Origin: Auanema rhodensis | Taxonomy: Eukaryota; Animalia; Nematoda | Length of the DNA: 64,000 bases | Reading direction: 5' to 3' | Assembly (NCBI GenBank): GCA_964057225.1 | Contig: OZ059896.1 | Location: forward strand, 14,446,001 to 14,510,000 | Part shown: piece after piece, positions 1-9,640 of the stretch | Layout of the letters: each line of letters starts with the position of its first letter | Position numbering within the stretch: the stretch's first letter is position 1 | Position numbers and translations under genes: made by a program | Notes under the pieces: generated by a model | Seen by the model: only the letters and a program-made list of their open reading frames with translations | Told to the model about the DNA's origin: nothing | The model's database searches: none

Positions 1-171
1 TGATTTAGATAGTTCAGTATCATCAAATCAAGCTTCATCCTACCACTAAGTTTTTTTTAACTTAGGTTTTTCTGTTTTCTCCGACAATCAACTGGTGCAT
101 GTACAATATTTTGTCTCATTTATATAAAATCTCTAGAAATCTCAAAGTAAAGTAGCGACTGTGCTCTTTCA

Positions 172-173
<2 letters not shown>

Positions 174-215
<42 letters not shown>

Positions 216-241
216 ATATATTTCTATCTCTTTCTCTCTCT
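174..241. repeat. (CT)n microsatellite
   Basis: Long ctctct run visible at 174-210, continuing imperfectly to ~241. Confidence 0.95.
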
Positions 242-613
242 TTACATATATATGTATGTATCCCTCTCCCTTCCCTCGTTTTCTTTTTGCCACGACGAAT
301 TCTTTTTTAAAGAAGAATCTGTTTCACGTATTTTTAAAAATGTGTATTCATTTGTTGTTATTCGCATATTTCATTATCTTAGAAATTTGTGGATTTAATC
401 CATAGTTCAAGGTCTGATATCATCATCTCAATGCTCATAATATATACATAATTTCTATTTTTAATTCCAAAAAATTAATAAAAATATTAAATTTTGTTTA
501 GAATTCTATTATTTGACGTTTAGAACTGAATATTTAAAATAATATTTGTAAAATCAACTGATAGAATCTTGATATTAACAGACAATAAGTTAAACAAATT
601 ATGATACATTGAT

Positions 614-3146
614 CTAATGACTGTCGGTTGGAAGAACTTTCATTGGTAGATTATCCATGGAGCAACTGAAATTTAATACTTAAACTTGAAAAACATACTA
701 AACTGTTAGATGTAATGAAAAATTCATTAAAACAACAAGTAGGACAAGAAGACAATGGGACAAACTAAACTTAAAAATTCGTATAATTGACAAGTAAAAA
801 GCTCACGAATCACAACAGAAGTTACATGTTAGCTCTTTTAGTCTCAATGACAAACCTGTAAAGGCACTGTTGAGCTGTAGCAGCAAGGAAGAGGAAAAGC
901 ACACAGAACTTGAAGATAGCAATCATTGAGAAATTCTGAAAGTTTATAGATTTGATTGGAGAAAGAAAAATGTTTTAGTTAACCTGTAAAAGGATAAAAA
1001 CAACAATGATGTTGAGAGGAATACGGAAGAGGTTGATGGTTGTTGAGCGAGTTTCTTCTGGAACGTACGCTCCACGTAAGCATCCCATTGCTGGCCAGAA
1101 GATTCCAACACAGACCTGACCGAGATTTAATGAATAATTTACTTAATCTCTAAAATAGTTACCTCGAAGAGGATGAAAGCAGCAAAGATGAGGGCACTGT
1201 TGTCGGGAGCAATAATGGGAATTGAAAGACAAATAGCACTCAATAAGAGAACATATCTATAAAGCTATACTTGAAAGAGACAACTCGAAAGATAATCTGT
1301 TACCTCATGAAATCCTCGGGTGGAGAATTCTTAGCAATAATCTTGAAAACAGAAGATCCTATCATAGTAGCTACCATGAATGCTGCGAAGATGAAACCAT
1401 GGGGAATGCTAGAACTTTCACCCTCGGCAGTTGCAGCCTGAACTGATAGTATTTCAAAATTATGAGAATCAGTTGTCACTCACAGCAGTAAGAGCTGGGG
1501 TCCATTCCAACACGAAAACATACATGGATCCCTCGAAGAGAGATTGAACAAGTCCCAAGCAAAGTACCTTGACATCTGAATAACGGAGCTGACATGAATA
1601 TGGATCGAAGCAATCAACAAACCACTACGAATGTTGAAAATAGCTCTAGAGAATGACTCCTGTACAGCAGCTTTTTCATTTCCATAGTTTTCAGGCCAGG
1701 TATTCATGAGAACAATACACATAAGACCAAGAATAACAAGAGCTACATCGAAAGGTGCTCTAAAAGAATAAGAAAAGTAATTAATATATTTCTCATCTAA
1801 AAAAGAGAAGAAGATACATATAATTATAAAAACTTACACATAACCAAAATGGTCAGCAACAAATTGGGCAACTACACCAGATATTATAGCAACTAAAGAG
1901 TTACCTAAGGCGGCATGTGAAAAGATATTTCCAAGCTGAGTATCAGAAAATCCTCTCTGAAATCGATTATGGTAATCTTCAATACGTTAATTATCGATGA
2001 ACTATTCTTATCTATTTCTTGTTCAAAATCTGATTGAGAAACACCGAATAAAAAGAAGATCGCTAAGATAGCCTCATTTTTGAATGAAATTTTGTCTCCT
2101 TGATTCGAACTAGAGCGGAGATTTCTATAAACTCTCACCTTATTGTGTTCGCAGACTAGCCAAGATTCAAAGGCTGAGTAAAGAATACTTGTGGCCATTC
2201 CTCCTAAGAATCGTCCAATCATAAGAATTTCGATTGAAGCAAAATGCTTAGTGATACATGATCCTCCATACAGAAGTCCATAGATAATACAGTTGTTACG
2301 TCGCCCACTGAAAAGAATCATATTTTCTCAGATTCATACATAGGTTGCTTGAGGAAAAACGTACAATTTGTCAGCAAAAGAGCCAACAATGGTACCAAAT
2401 AGTAGACTTGATCCGAAGCCGGCAATAAAAAGTATTTCGATTTGATGCTTTGTCATGCCATATGAATCGTAAAGAGCATAAACATGAGGCCCCTGAAGCC
2501 AATCACCAGCTGCAAAAGATATTTTCAGTTAACCTTAAAGCTATTTTTGTCTGAATTTTTGGAATTTGAACTGTTTTTCTCATGCACACTAATTTTGTTT
2601 TCGTAAAGCAATGCTTTGACAGTCATACAACTGTTTAAACAACATATAAATGAATTAGATTCATGTAGATGAGACGAGAGAAAGAGATTTTTATGGTCAC
2701 AACGTTGTGTTTGTCAAATATTTCATATATTATACCAAATGTTAGCTATATCAAAATTGATTTAAATAAGCTATACTACTTATATTCAAGCAAGCCTAGA
2801 TCATCCTGTAAATCGAAGGCAACAGCTAAAGTGTTGGAGCAAATTTCAAAAAGTATTGTTCTCCATCGGACGAACAAGATGAGCGATTGTGATCAAAAAA
2901 AGCCTGTCAGTTACAGTTTACCGAAGAAATGAATAAGAAAGAGAGAATAACACTCTTAGGTTAAGATAGTTCAAACAAATCAATTTTATCAAAAAAGAAC
3001 TTACCAACGGCCATTAAATATACAATCACATATGTTCTTTGGAAACTTAGAAATGAAGTTTCAGTATTACTTTCCACTTTACTTCTTGTGTAGAAGAATA
3101 AAACTCCGCAAGCAGCAGTTAGGGCATAGAAGACAAGTTGAAACAT
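614..3146 (-). CDS. samt-1: MFSD5 / molybdate-anion transporter family MFS protein (spliced)
   Basis: N-terminal MFQLVFYALTAACGVLFFY, then FQRTYVIVYLMAV-AGDWLQGPHVYALYDSYG, GRFLGGMATSILYSAFESW and CVGIFWPAMGCLRGAYVPEETRSTTINLFRIPLN, all MFSD5 motifs, joined across GT-AG introns. Confidence 0.9.
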
Positions 3147-3809
3147 TTGGCATCAATTTTGATAAATTAAGTACGAATCCTTGAAACTGATGCCCTTAAC
3201 TGTTGCTGAACAAGAGGAGTCGCTCAATGTTCAGATTCCCGGGAAAGGTCCGCCCCCTATTCAATGATTCAAAATTCGCTACCTTATCGAAAATTTAGAT
3301 CGGAGATATATTAGATATTCACTTTCTAATACAAAACTAAGGCTATTGATATTTAGAATAAACTTGCAATCACTGACGATTCTTAGCGATAAACGAAGAA
3401 AGCTTGAAGCATCTTTATAGCTTGAAAGAAAAAACATGATCCAGATTACATCTTAAATCTCAAACTCTCGATTCAAAATTGTAGATCCATGCAGGACAGC
3501 TTAAAAAAGTTTTCAGCAAAGCAGTGCTAGACATATGCTCTCCCACACATTGAATTAGAAAAGAAAAGCATACCTATTATTATTTAAATTGAAATTCAAT
3601 GAAGAAATTGCAAAGATAAAACGGTAAATCATTGAATATGATTGTTTTTAAATTGGCATAACTACCGGCCACACACAATCATTATAAGAGCTTTTTAAAT
3701 TAGAAAAAAATTGAAAGCTTAGCTTCACAAATACAAAAACAATTTATTAAATTGTAGATCTAGCAAGTCTATGAGAGTAACAAAAAATTAACAACTACGT
3801 TTTAAAAAC

Positions 3810-4029
3810 TTAAACAGCATTGGCCCATTCCTCACTGACGCTTCTAGCAATACAGATTCCAGCTGCAAATCCTACTAAACCCTTGAAGATACCCCTTAAA
3901 AAACTTTATTATAATAATCAAAAATAGAGAGACTAACCATTTGAATGGATCGTTATAAACGCTATTAACAATTTCAAAACGAGTATTAATTGGTTCTGGA
4001 CCAGATGGAGCCTGTTGCAAACGAAACAT
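3810..4029 (-). CDS. 58-aa TOM6-like mitochondrial outer-membrane microprotein (exons 4029-3938 and 3894-3810)
   Basis: Spliced product MFRLQQAPSGPEPINTRFEIVNSVYNDPFKWGIFKGLVGFAAGICIARSVSEEWANAV*. TTACAG acceptor just before the ATG and a 43-nt GT-AG intron. GFAAGICIARSVSE resembles metazoan TOM6 LFAAGVWLARNLSD. Confidence 0.7.
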
Positions 4030-4344
4030 TGTGAGATCTGTAAAACTTTCATTAAATTTTTTAAAATCAAAACAAACAATTTAAATTAAATTAATTATAA
4101 TATTAAAATAATAATAAAAGTTGTACTATAAATGATGAAAGGGCCTGAAATATGTCCAAAAAAAATTCAAAACGTAAAATTGCGACCAGAGAGTCAGTGC
4201 ACAAATAGAAGAGATATGAAAGAAAAGGGGAAAGAATCTATGTACTTTGATCAGTCTAAGACATTATCAGTGAGTTGGTGGACTTGGAACCCTACCTTTG
4301 ACGACTTCGCCTCTCAATTTCTCATATAAGTTTGTTTCAAAGTT

Positions 4345-7116
4345 ATGATTCGAACTAACAGAGCTTTAACTTTTACTCGTGTTGTACATGGAGTAAGCAA
4401 TCGTAGGTATTTTTTCTACCTTTTTTAAAAGGTTGCTAACTGATTTTCAAGTTTAGTGCTTCAACTCTGACTGGCAATGACTATCAATTCTTGCAAACCA
4501 GTGAAATTCCTTCTTACCATTTCCAAAAGAGCTTGAGAAGACTTCCGATCCCCAAGCTTGAGGACTCTGTTAAAAGGTTTATTTTAAATTACGTGGGAAA
4601 ATTTGAATTGAAAAAATTTGAGGTACTTGGCCAGTTCAAAGGCTGTTCTGTCCGAAGATGACTATTCCAACACTGAAAAGGCTATTCGTGATTTTGAGAA
4701 GAATGAAGGACCAGGTAAATTATAAATTGGCATATCTTTATATCCATTTCTTTACAGCTCTTCAAGATGCCCTTCTCGATTACGACAAGGCTCATAAAGA
4801 CACCAGCTACATCTCTGAGCCGTGGTTCGACATGTATCTCAGTTCTCGTGTTCCATGTCCCGTGAACTACAACCCTTTCATGATGTATGCTCCTGATCAT
4901 GATGCGCGTTTCAACCATCAAGTTAGAATTTTTGTTCCTGTGATTCCGTCTTTTATCGAATTTTTCAGCTCACTCGTGCTACCAACTTTGCTATTTCCTA
5001 CGCTAGATTCAAGAAGTCTTTAGATGCTAATATCTTAGCTCCTGAAGTGTTTCACATGAATCCGAAGAAAAGCGATACCCCATTCTTCAGAAAAGTCTGC
5101 AAGTAAGTTCAATAGAGTTTATAATGCTTCAACTCGGAACATTTCAGAACATTACCACCAAGCCTTTCATGGTTTGGAGCTGTTGCCTTCAAAGCTTTCC
5201 CACTTGATATGAGTCAGTACAAATCTCTTTTCAATGGAAATAGAATTCCTACTAAAGGAAAAGATATCTTGTATAGGGTAAGTCTACAGTTGCCATGAAG
5301 TAGATCTGATGATTGTTTTAGGACCCTGATGCCAAGCATTTCCTCTGTATTCATAAGGGAAGACTCTTCTCTGTTCGTATCTTTGATGACAATGGTAGTT
5401 GTTTTTAAATTTATATTATCAACAAGATGTTTTAGGTAATATTCTTTCTCCTAGTGAAATTCATTCATCTTTGGCTCATATTCTCAGTAACAGCACAGAG
5501 ATAGCCAATCAAGACTGCGTCGGTATGTCACTTGCTTACTGACTTCTCTGCAGTTGTATTTTTTGTTTTAGGTTCCCTCACCACTCTTGAAAGAGATCAA
5601 TGGGCTGCTACTCGCCTTGAGTTAGAAAATGCTGGAAATCATGAACAACTTAGAGCAGTTGATGGTGCTCTTTTCGCTCTCTGTTTAGATGATTTGAAGA
5701 CTGAGGATCACAAGAGGTATTACCATATTTGGAGCCTTACATACTTATCTTTCGCAGACTTGTTCAGTCTTTACTTATTGGTGATGAAGGAAAGAATCGT
5801 TGGTTCGACAAGTGCTTCCAACTTATCGTTGATGGTATGATGTTTTCATTGCACATGCATTAAAACTCCACTGTTCAGGAAATGGCCAAGCTACCATTAA
5901 CTTCGAGCATTCTTGGGGAGATGGTGTCGCTGTTCTTCGTCTGATGGAAGAATCCTTCAAAGATACCAATAAGAATCACTTTGTATCTCCAGATGATGTA
6001 CCAAAGCCTGTTGAAATCTCCAATGTTCAAGAAATTAGTATGTGATACTCCCTATTTCTTCTCAACTTATACTCGACTTCAGAATTCAAACTTACCGATT
6101 CAATTCGTAACACCATCAATTCTGCCCAAAGTACTCATGTAACGGCTAACTCTGGACTTGACTTTGCTACTATGGAGTACCCGGGAATGAACAGAGATAC
6201 TATCAAGAAGACTAAGCTTTCTCCTGATTCAGTTATGCAACTTGCAATTCAGGTTATTGTTAGATTATTACTATGAAACTTTAATCCTTCAGATGGCTTT
6301 CTACTCTCTCTACAAGGAGTTCGTTCCTACTTATGAGTCATGCTCAACTGCTGCTTTTCTTAAAGGAAGAACTGAGTGCATGAGGCATTTCATTTTAATC
6401 TTATTAGTTAGTAATCTTTCTGCTTAGATCGGCTACTTCAGCCACTCGTGAAGCAACTTTGGCTATCTTGGAAGGCAAAACTGATGTAAGATCTTTATTA
6501 GAGAAGTGTTCTAACGATCACAGTCAATTGGTGAAAGAGGCTTCTATGGGTTAGTTTACTGTTTGTTTTCATATCTTATCGTATAAGAGACAACCTCTAT
6601 CGTATCAGCTTGTCCTTCGTACCATGAATTGATTATTTAAGGCCAAGGTTTTGATCGTCATTTACTTGGTTTGAAGATTACTGCCCAGCGTCAAGGCAAA
6701 GACGTACCTTCTTTCTTTAATGTAAATTTCTTTTAATTTCTTTATTGTACTATTTGCTTTACACAGGATGCCGGTTATAATCGCATGGGACAGTTTGTGC
6801 TTTCAACCAGTACCCTCTCTACTGAAACCATAGTTTTCGGAGGTGCGTTCTATCTGCTCTCGTTGTTTAGTAAAATCAAATCATTCACGTATATTTCTTT
6901 TCCAGGTTTTGGACCAGTTGTTAAGGATGGATTTGGTGTGGGATACAATGTAGTCGCCTCAAAATTGGGTGCCGTCATTTCAAGCCACAAGGTGATCTTT
7001 CGTTTTTCTACTTCCTTTTTTGATACACAGTCACTTTTCAGTCTCAAAAGGATTCTGCTCAGTTCTCTGATGCCTTGTACAAAAACTTAGATATCTTGAA
7101 GAGAATTCTTCAATAA
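4345..7116 (+). CDS. cpt-2: Carnitine O-palmitoyltransferase 2 (spliced)
   Basis: HFQKSLRRLPIPKLEDSVKRYL, TSYISEPWFDMYL, AFPLDMSQY, NRWFDK, FEHSWGDGVAVLR, YESCSTAAFLKGRTE, GQGFDRHL, GFGPVVKDGFGVGY. Confidence 0.95.
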
Positions 7117-8568: not shown

Positions 8569-9640
8569 ATGAGCATGGTGTTAAGACTTTTAACACGCGG
8601 CTCCCGCATAATAAACAGAGCCTTTTCAGAAGCTTCTCGTGGTGATACAGGTTTTACTTTGGTATAGATTTTTTTTCTATATTGCATGGTTTTTAGGTAT
8701 ATTAGATGGATATCATCCAACACCTCTAGGAGACTCTGATGTAAGCCAAAAAACTCGCATTTCCATGTTATCCACTGAAATGCTCGAAGCAAAGCAGATT
8801 GGAGTGCGTGGTTTATCATGTTATGGTTTCAGAATGATTGATGGGCAATTTGTGTTAGTTTCTTTTGCGAAATTTCCAAGGTAATGAATTTTTGAAGTTA
8901 TGGACCTGTTGCATTATTCCCCAAAACAGTACTATCATGGAGAATTTTAACACCGGATGATATATCCCCAGATTCATTATCATTATTTGTCGCATTAAAC
9001 CCCAAAATAGATATTTTAGTTCTAGGAGTAGGAGACAAAAAAAATATTGATAAGTAGGTTTCAATTTTCTTTAAGGTATGTAAAAAATAATTGTAGAGTT
9101 CGTCAAAGAGTTCATCCTTTTTTGAAAGAACATAAAATTGGATTAGAGATTATGGATACGGTTTGCGCTACTGTACTTAAACATCATAGTTTAACTGACA
9201 TATTTAAGGAAGATGCTATAGCTACATTTAACTTTTTGAATGCAGAAAATCGCTATGTTGCAGCTGGACTTTACCCTCCTGATGATATGGTAATGTTAAT
9301 TACGATGATTTCTTTTGGAAAAAATAGTTTAAAGATTGTTACTAATGATGAGTATGGGCGAGCCTTGAACTTACTGAAAGGATGGGATGTTGTTGATGAG
9401 ATGCCACTTCTTACTGGTATACATGATTCCATAGATTTTGCAGAAGATTTAGTTAAAAAACTATGGAATGGTCAAGGAGATTGGGACACAGTTCGACAAA
9501 AGGTTGAGCATTACTAATGTTGAAGTACAGTAATTAAAAACAAAAAATTAATTCAGGTGTTGGCTTCTCCTGAAGAAAAGGAAGCTCGACAAGCTGCTGC
9601 ATTGGAAGCTAAAAAAGCAAATAAAATTGAAGATAAATAG
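8569..9640 (+). CDS. nuaf-3: NDUFAF3 / Mth938-domain complex I assembly factor (spliced)
   Basis: Mitochondrial presequence-like N-terminus, GPVALFPKTVLSW, PKIDILVLGVG, LEIMDT, EDAIATFNFLNAENRYVAAGLYPP. Confidence 0.9.

What the first reader, a model, noticed from the sequence alone, without database searches (positions are those of the whole stretch)
3810..4029. Hidden two-exon TOM6-like microprotein
Seen: a trans-splice-like acceptor, a typical 43-nt intron and a 58-aa product with one amphipathic TM, WGIFKGLVGFAAGICIARSVSEEW. The ORF track mistranslates it. Known: TOM6 C-termini carry an F-A-A-G-[VI]-x-[LI]-A-R-x-[LV]-S-[DE] pattern. To my recollection, nematode TOM complexes are annotated with TOMM-7/20/22/40 but no TOM6. 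Inference: this is a missed nematode TOM6, transcribed divergently from the mitochondrial/peroxisomal cpt-2 operon.
Basis: partly seen in the sequence, partly recalled or inferred. Interest (0 to 1): 0.7.

Follow-up and report, generated by a model that had tools for sequence, protein, structure and literature searches.

The report
Unnamed nematode TOM6 import-pore subunit
A real, expressed two-exon gene for a 58-residue membrane protein sits here; it is the counterpart of the uncharacterised C. elegans gene C08F8.9 and is most likely the unnamed nematode version of TOM6, a small subunit of the pore that imports proteins into mitochondria.

Summary
On the minus strand, exon 1 (4029..3938), a 43-nt GT..AG intron (3937..3895) and exon 2 (3894..3810) encode 58 aa. 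Transcriptome contigs from four samples of one study carry the spliced form. One contig ends in the last bases of the SL1 leader, joined at the predicted acceptor 8 nt before the ATG.

The gene is not unknown everywhere. Collinear proteins of 54-58 aa are deposited for strongylids, Pristionchus and Caenorhabditis. They include C. elegans C08F8.9, all named "uncharacterized" or "hypothetical", with no Pfam domain. In C. elegans and C. briggsae the gene is also head-to-head with cpt-2, and the intron splits the same Trp codon in C. briggsae.

The TOM6 reading is supported but not proven. The only PDB match of the nematode proteins and profiles is Drosophila Tom6 (9ETM chain G, E 4.6e-4 to 6e-3). 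The three Tom6 residues that hold a lipid against Tom40 (Tyr15, Trp21, Lys25) align with conserved Y25, W31 and K35. Pfam TOM6p does not detect the family, and no human or fungal TOM6 chain was matched. The matched core straddles the intron, so exon-by-exon searches found nothing. The joined sequence was never submitted; database orthologues stood in for it. I put TOM6 at about 0.75: a new member of a known kind, of moderate interest.

The parts
4038..4045 (-). SL1 trans-splice acceptor (ttttacag); the mature mRNA starts at 4037
   Evidence: Searches give the sequence. In one search the loose end at 4039 in X1 and X4 contigs reverse-complements to CCAAGTTTG, the SL1 3' end. One search finds the SL1 22-mer 1,267 times in the own genome.
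4030..4037 (-). 8-nt 5' UTR between the SL1 junction and the ATG
3938..4029 (-). Exon 1 coding part: residues 1-30 plus the first two bases of Trp31. It holds the conserved MFR start, a Pro-rich stretch and the juxtamembrane motif with Y25.
   Evidence: aligns to columns 1-30 of orthologues; 59.3 bits, E 6.5e-14, to the family profile.
3895..3937 (-). 43-nt GT..AG intron, phase 2, inside the Trp31 codon
   Evidence: One search gives the sequence. One search gives the contig arithmetic 202+103+9=314, with the piece ending at 3893/3894. One search shows the same position and phase in C. briggsae.
3810..3894 (-). Exon 2 coding part: last base of Trp31 and residues 32-58 (K35, a Gly-rich transmembrane helix, A47-R48, an acidic SEEW tail), then the TAA stop at 3812-3810
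   Evidence: E 2.2e-4 to P0001; 49.8 bits.
3692..3809 (-). 3' UTR, at least as far as the RNA contig reaches
   Evidence: X1 record 2 covers 3692-3893.
4046..4249 (.). Short shared upstream region between the microgene and cpt-2; a presumed bidirectional promoter (inferred)
   Evidence: RNA contigs for cpt-2 begin at 4250-4295 and the bins over 4076-4259 have almost no depth. One search shows the same head-to-head layout in C. elegans and C. briggsae.
4250..7100 (+). Divergent neighbour: carnitine O-acyltransferase (cpt-2-like), multi-exon. The end coordinate is approximate.
   Evidence: spliced contigs; Carn_acyltransf hits on three exon ORFs.
1300..3233 (-). Downstream same-strand neighbour: MFS_5 (MFSD5-like) transporter gene. 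The lower coordinate is approximate.
   Evidence: PF05631, E 1.8e-28, 2.6e-12 and 3.3e-6; contigs. One search shows the same microgene-then-MFS_5 order in Pristionchus pacificus.

Best explanation
The locus is a small housekeeping gene transcribed from the minus strand. Its mRNA is SL1 trans-spliced 8 nt before the ATG and cis-spliced once. It encodes a 58-residue tail-anchored protein, the nematode orthologue of TOM6.

Shown:
- The spliced, SL1-capped mRNA exists.
- The protein is conserved at the same length across clade-V nematodes.
- The locus is orthologous to C. elegans C08F8.9 by position and by sequence.
- There is significant, unique sequence similarity to Drosophila Tom6.

Inferred mechanism: after translation the C-terminal, moderately hydrophobic, Gly-rich helix (about residues 31-47) inserts into the mitochondrial outer membrane. 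The Pro-rich N-terminus faces the cytosol and the 11-residue acidic tail faces the intermembrane space. The helix packs on the outside of the Tom40 beta-barrel next to Tom22. Y25, W31 and K35 clamp a phospholipid at the Tom40-Tom6 interface, as Tyr15, Trp21 and Lys25 do in the fly complex. This stabilises assembly of the TOM core complex.

The compact head-to-head arrangement with the mitochondrial enzyme gene cpt-2 may allow shared promoter control. That point is inferred only.
For: Gene reality:
- Searches show the spliced and SL1 trans-spliced RNA.
- Searches show the two exons collinear with 58-aa orthologues, with W at the split codon.
- One search shows the same intron position in C. briggsae.
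- One search shows a single copy in the genome.

Orthology:
- Searches find orthologues in Cylicocyclus, Ancylostoma, Necator, Haemonchus, Ostertagia, Parelaphostrongylus, Pristionchus, C. remanei, C. brenneri, C. briggsae and C. elegans (C08F8.9).
- Searches show synteny with Carn_acyltransf (cpt-2) and, further along, DUF498.
- Searches show synteny with MFS_5.

TOM6 identity:
- The only PDB sequence matched at E below 1 is 9etm_G, 'Mitochondrial import receptor subunit TOM6'. Single sequences give E 0.006 (P0001), 0.007 (P0015), 0.45 (C. remanei) and 0.96 (Pristionchus). Profiles give 4.6e-4 (A2) and 1.3e-3 (A3).
- The register is ungapped and the same every time (query 19 to chain 3). No Tom5, Tom7 or Tom22 chain was hit.
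- The 9ETM paper (PMC11707698) shows Tom6 co-purifying with Tom40. It names Tyr15, Trp21 and Lys25 as the lipid-binding residues. In the alignment these fall on Y25, W31 and K35, which are 90% or more conserved in A3.
- The language-model neighbours of exon 2 and of the full-length orthologue are all small tail-anchored outer-membrane proteins. Three of the top five clusters for the full-length query carry TOM6 Pfam families.
- The AF2 model is a short helix, a kink at Pro28, then a long helix 28-57. The hydrophobic segment and the short tail are consistent with a tail anchor.
- Tom7 is found elsewhere in the genome. An earlier scan note reports a separate Tom5 candidate. That leaves the TOM6 slot open.
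Against: - Pfam TOM6p (PF15184) and fungal Tom6 (PF17112) give no hit at E up to 10. This holds for either exon, for six full-length orthologues and for the six-frame genome.
- Human and fungal TOM6 chains in the PDB are not matched.
- The Drosophila match is short (30 columns, 20-23 bits).
- The four single-sequence hits are not independent of each other.
- The best language-model neighbour of the full-length orthologue is fungal Emr1, tied with TOM6p at 0.89. All scores are under 0.9, which the tool calls a lead only.
- Fold searches are uninformative for a single helix.
- There is no localisation or interaction evidence.
- The joined protein of this window itself was not searched, by rule.
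Confidence: 0.75

Rival explanations
1. It is a conserved tail-anchored microprotein of the mitochondrial outer membrane, or of another organelle membrane, that is not a TOM subunit. Its resemblance to fly Tom6 would be convergence between short juxtamembrane-plus-helix peptides.
For: No Pfam TOM6 model detects it. The top language-model neighbour of the full-length orthologue is Emr1, an unrelated fungal tail-anchored protein, and all scores are below 0.9. The PDB match is only 20-23 bits.
Against: The PDB match is unique, with the next best at E above 1. It lies largely in the non-membrane motif (I-V-x-S-I-Y-N-N-x-F-x-W), so composition does not explain it. It keeps one register in four divergent orthologues and hits exactly the three residues with a described role in fly Tom6. 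ERMES and Emr1 are fungal, by established knowledge.
Confidence: 0.17
2. It is a different small TOM subunit, namely TOM5, rather than TOM6.
For: The exon-2 piece's nearest language-model cluster carries TOM5_2 (0.87, 200 of 256 features).
Against: No Tom5 chain in the PDB, fly or fungal, is matched by any family member or profile, while the fly Tom6 chain of the same entry is. With the full-length orthologue, TOM6 clusters outrank TOM5 clusters. PF27930 could not be run because it is not in the local library.
Confidence: 0.05
3. It is not a protein-coding gene: a chance ORF on a non-coding or UTR-like transcript.
Against: The ORF is the first AUG after the SL1 junction. It is kept at 54-58 aa, with about 69% mean column identity, across Strongylida, Caenorhabditis and Pristionchus. 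The intron phase is conserved.
Confidence: 0.01

Closest known systems
Drosophila melanogaster Tom6 (PDB 9ETM chain G; PMC11707698)
   Same: A small single-helix subunit. It gives the only significant PDB match, over 30 ungapped columns. The two share I-V-x-S-I-Y-N-N-x-F-x-W-x-x-x-K, then F-x-x-G-V-x-x-A-[KR]. The lipid-binding Tyr15, Trp21 and Lys25 align with Y25, W31 and K35.
   Different: By the alignment offset, the nematode protein carries about 10 more N-terminal residues: a conserved MFR start and a Pro-rich stretch. It has Pro28 where the fly has Glu. Its helix is richer in Gly (G36, G39, G43), and it ends in a conserved acidic S-x-S-E-E-W tail. Complex membership is proven for the fly protein and only inferred here.
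C. elegans C08F8.9 (UniProt Q7YX96) and C. briggsae CBG06026
   Same: Orthologue by sequence (about 70% identity on exon 1 and 59% on exon 2, counted by hand), by intron position (C. briggsae) and by head-to-head synteny with cpt-2.
   Different: It is annotated as 55 aa from the second ATG, while an in-frame upstream ATG restores the family-wide MFR start. It is named only 'Uncharacterized protein'. No paper in the searched library mentions it.
Vertebrate TOMM6 / Pfam TOM6p (PF15184)
   Same: The same proposed role and a similar size. TOM6p-bearing clusters are among the nearest language-model neighbours.
   Different: There is no HMMER-detectable similarity. PF15184 does not hit the exons, the orthologues or the genome, and human TOM6 chains in the PDB are not matched.
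Fungal Tom6 (PF17112) and Tom5 (PF10642, PF27930)
   Same: Small tail-anchored TOM subunits that appear as language-model neighbours.
   Different: No sequence-profile hit and no PDB Tom5 chain matched.

Membership tests
TOM6 (small subunit of the TOM core complex) | Detectable sequence homology to an experimentally established Tom6 | tested here: met
   9etm_G, Drosophila Tom6, is the only PDB hit below E 1. Profiles give E 4.6e-4 (A2) and 1.3e-3 (A3). Single sequences give 0.006, 0.007, 0.45 and 0.96. All use the same register. The test used orthologues and exon rows, not the joined window protein.
TOM6 (small subunit of the TOM core complex) | Match to the curated family models (Pfam TOM6p PF15184; fungal Tom6 PF17112) | tested here: not met
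   No Pfam family at E up to 10 for the exons or for seven full-length orthologues. The PF15184 six-frame search of the own genome was empty, while the same method found Tom7. A Pfam match is a detection aid rather than a biological definition, and the model may be vertebrate-centred.
TOM6 (small subunit of the TOM core complex) | About 50-75 aa with a single C-terminal transmembrane helix (tail anchor) and a short intermembrane-space tail | tested here: met
   The product is 58 aa. AF2 gives helix 28-57 after a kink. The best 17-aa hydrophobic window is residues 31-47 (Kyte-Doolittle 1.5-2.1), followed by an 11-residue tail.
TOM6 (small subunit of the TOM core complex) | Conservation of the residues that contact lipid or Tom40 in a solved complex | tested here: met
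   Fly Tyr15, Trp21 and Lys25 align with Y25, W31 and K35, which are conserved in 90% or more of family rows.
TOM6 (small subunit of the TOM core complex) | Physical association with Tom40 and Tom22 in the outer-membrane translocase | not testable with these tools
   This needs co-purification, cross-linking or multimer modelling. Structure prediction folds single chains only.
TOM6 (small subunit of the TOM core complex) | Mitochondrial outer-membrane localisation | not testable with these tools
   This requires tagging and imaging or fractionation.
TOM5 | Sequence homology to established Tom5 proteins | tested here: not met
   No Tom5 chain or Pfam Tom5 model was matched. There is only a sub-0.9 language-model neighbour. 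PF27930 is not in the local library.
SL1 trans-spliced nematode mRNA | SL1 leader joined at a 3' splice acceptor upstream of the ATG | tested here: met
   Nine non-genomic letters on the RNA contigs, plus the genomic AG, equal the last 11 nt of SL1 at acceptor 4039/4038. SL1 genes are abundant in the genome.

The most novel reading that the evidence does not exclude
The C08F8.9 family is the genuine TOM6 of nematodes, so far unnamed. It belongs to a short ecdysozoan-type Tom6, marked by a Y-N-N-x-F-x-W...K motif, that current TOM6 family models do not recognise. Together with the separate Tom5 candidate it would complete a five-subunit TOM core in C. elegans. Its conserved head-to-head pairing with cpt-2 might also couple import-pore biogenesis to fatty-acid oxidation genes.
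Probability: 0.65. Interest if true: 0.5.

Novelty: new member of a known kind. Interest (0 to 1): 0.45.

Why it matters
C. elegans is a main model for mitochondrial import stress and the mitochondrial unfolded-protein response. Yet in the sources I could search, its TOM complex is described with tomm-7, -20, -22, -40 and -70 and no TOM6. Assigning C08F8.9 and its orthologues in parasitic strongylids to TOM6 gives a testable gene for TOM assembly and stability studies. It improves annotation of a conserved microprotein, including several wrong gene models. It also shows that the Pfam TOM6p model fails to detect this nematode family. It is not a new kind of biology: TOM6 is expected in animals.

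Tried and rejected
Exon-by-exon searches failed because the conserved core (residues 19-48) straddles the intron:
- Pfam on exon 1, exon 2 and the unspliced 61-aa ORF gave nothing.
- PDB phmmer with exon 2 gave nothing, and with exon 1 only a chance SLC12A2 hit at E 1.4.
- A word-indexed protein search with the unspliced ORF gave no candidates.
- The PF15184 six-frame search of the own genome gave nothing.

Other dead ends:
- PF27930 (TOM5_2) is not in the local library.
- The second hit of the exhaustive search, P0002, is a 208-aa repeat protein and was judged spurious.
- Foldseek against the PDB returned one hit at E 7.5, and the Atlas shape search returned unrelated helices from large proteins. 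A single helix carries no fold information.
- P0005 had no contig on record.
- Literature searches for 'tomm-6' with elegans, for 'C08F8.9', for Tom6 with nematode, and for lists of TOM subunits found no statement on a nematode TOM6.

Full report
**1. What is in the sequence.**
The feature lies on the minus strand.
- The ATG is at 4029. It opens a frame of 30 codons plus TG.
- A 43-nt intron follows at 3937..3895, reading GTTAGT...TTTAAG.
- Exon 2 runs 3894..3810. It completes a Trp codon, adds 27 residues and ends in TAA.
- The total is 177 nt, or 58 aa.
- Eight bases upstream of the ATG is a ttttacag acceptor.

**2. Is it expressed and spliced as predicted?**
When laid on 1500-7000, their contigs lack every cpt-2 intron, so they are transcriptome assemblies.

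X1 record 2 is 314 nt. Its listed piece covers 3692-3893 (202 nt). The remaining 112 nt equal 3937-4039 (103 nt) plus the 9 loose letters reported at 4039. The one-base shift against my intron coordinates is the G shared by both sides. This is arithmetic; the joint's own row was among the 7 joints not shown.

The loose letters reverse-complement to CCAAGTTTG. With the genomic AG they make the last 11 nt of the canonical SL1 leader. The leader's sequence is from established knowledge. The full 22-mer occurs 1,267 times in this genome against 0 for the control, and the repeat unit shows a donor GT, an Sm site and a terminal hairpin. So the mRNA is SL1 trans-spliced at 4038/4037 and cis-spliced once. 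The 58-codon ORF starts at the first AUG.

**3. Finding relatives under the exon-by-exon rule.**
Each exon alone found nothing in Pfam or the PDB. The unspliced ORF found no candidates.

The longest stop-free reference containing exon 2 is window:3813-3905:-, 31 aa, of which 4 residues come from the intron. It went to the exhaustive HMMER search. That returned a 58-aa Cylicocyclus nassatus 'uncharacterized protein', P0001, at E 2.2e-4.

Searches from P0001, and then from a profile, gave further orthologues:
- Ancylostoma, Necator, Haemonchus, Ostertagia and Parelaphostrongylus
- Pristionchus pacificus
- C. remanei and C. brenneri
- C. briggsae CBG06026 and C. elegans C08F8.9 (Q7YX96)

All are named hypothetical or uncharacterized, and none has a Pfam domain.

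In alignment A3 the window's exon 1 fills columns 1-30 and exon 2 fills columns 32-58. Column 31 is W in every full-length row, which is the split TG|G codon. This validates the splice model independently. The gene is single-copy in its 181-Mb genome.

**4. Orthology by position.**
In C. elegans chromosome IV and in C. briggsae, the gene lies head-to-head with a 646-aa carnitine acyltransferase, followed by Pex14 and, in C. elegans, DUF498. In the window the + strand gene starting at about 4250 is Carn_acyltransf, and a DUF498 fragment lies at 9047-9514.

On the other side, an MFS_5 transporter gene follows on the same strand, exactly as in Pristionchus. The C. briggsae intron interrupts the same Trp codon in the same phase.

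**5. What the protein is.**
Every family member tried, and both profiles, match one PDB sequence and no other below E 1. That sequence is 9etm_G, 'Mitochondrial import receptor subunit TOM6':
- Single sequences gave E 0.006, 0.007, 0.45 and 0.96.
- Profiles gave 4.6e-4 and 1.3e-3.
- The alignment is always ungapped, query 19 to chain 3.

9ETM is the Drosophila TOM core complex purified from fly retina. In that work Tom6 co-purified with Tom40 and was confirmed by mass spectrometry. The paper describes Tyr15, Trp21 and Lys25 of Tom6 holding a phospholipid at the Tom40-Tom6 interface (PMC11707698). The chain starts at residue 7, so those residues align with Y25, W31 and K35 of the nematode protein. 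All three are conserved in 90% or more of A3 rows, and all are present in the window: Y25 in exon 1, W31 at the splice and K35 in exon 2.

The matched core (residues 19-48) straddles the intron. That explains why the exon-wise searches were blank.

Supporting evidence:
- Language-model neighbours are exclusively small tail-anchored mitochondrial outer-membrane proteins: TOM6p, Tom6, TOM5_2, Tom5 and Emr1. All scores are below 0.9, so they are leads only.
- AF2 predicts a short helix, a kink at Pro28 and a long helix to residue 57, with mean pLDDT 76.
- The most hydrophobic 17-residue window is 31-47, followed by an 11-residue net-acidic tail.
- Tom7 is found elsewhere in the genome by the same six-frame method.
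- An earlier scan note reports a distinct Tom5 candidate (not tested here).

**6. What argues against.**
Pfam TOM6p and fungal Tom6 models do not see the family. Human and fungal TOM6 chains in the PDB are not matched.

The fly match is short, at 20-23 bits. Fold searches with a single helix are meaningless. Localisation and complex membership are untested.

**7. Verdict.**
The main rival is an unrelated tail-anchored microprotein, at about 0.17.

The gene is not 'hidden' in general, because models exist in C. elegans and several parasites. But no source or paper I could search names it TOM6. It is a new member of a known kind and of moderate interest. No protein of this species was returned by the database searches.

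No step needed referral.

Noticed in passing
L002:5985-6010 (C. briggsae); P0012 against P0007 and P0011: The annotated 55-aa C. elegans and C. briggsae proteins start at the second ATG. An in-frame ATG three codons upstream, right after a tttttcag acceptor, restores the MFR start that all other nematode orthologues share. The deposited start is probably 3 residues short.
   Followed up: partly
P0006, P0003, P0004, P0014, P0016, P0017, P0018: Several parasite gene models look wrong. Necator NECAME_16844 has a wrong second exon. The Ancylostoma, Necator and Ostertagia models carry unconserved N-terminal extensions (66-104 aa) ahead of the conserved MFR start.
   Followed up: partly
G000:C3:6741531-6768501 and beyond (L007, L008): There is a very large tandem array of SL1 RNA genes with a period of about 252 bp. 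The 22-mer occurs 1,187 times forward and 80 times in reverse. The unit shows a donor GT, an Sm site and a hairpin, but no Rfam family, neither SL1 nor 5S, reached gathering score on 900 bases of it.
   Followed up: partly
window 1300-3233 (-) and L009:9260-15261: An MFS_5 (MFSD5-like) transporter gene follows the microgene on the same strand, about 460 nt downstream. The order is the same in Pristionchus pacificus. This could be a conserved operon; SL2 usage was not tested.
   Followed up: no
window 6385-6427 (+): One cpt-2 intron is reported with ends AG..TT and 2 ambiguous bases. Shifted by 2, it is a 43-nt GC..AG intron, a rare but known splice class.
   Followed up: partly
window 120-310: A CT/GA-rich simple repeat gives the runs of SLSLSL and RERERE in the ORF list.
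   Followed up: no
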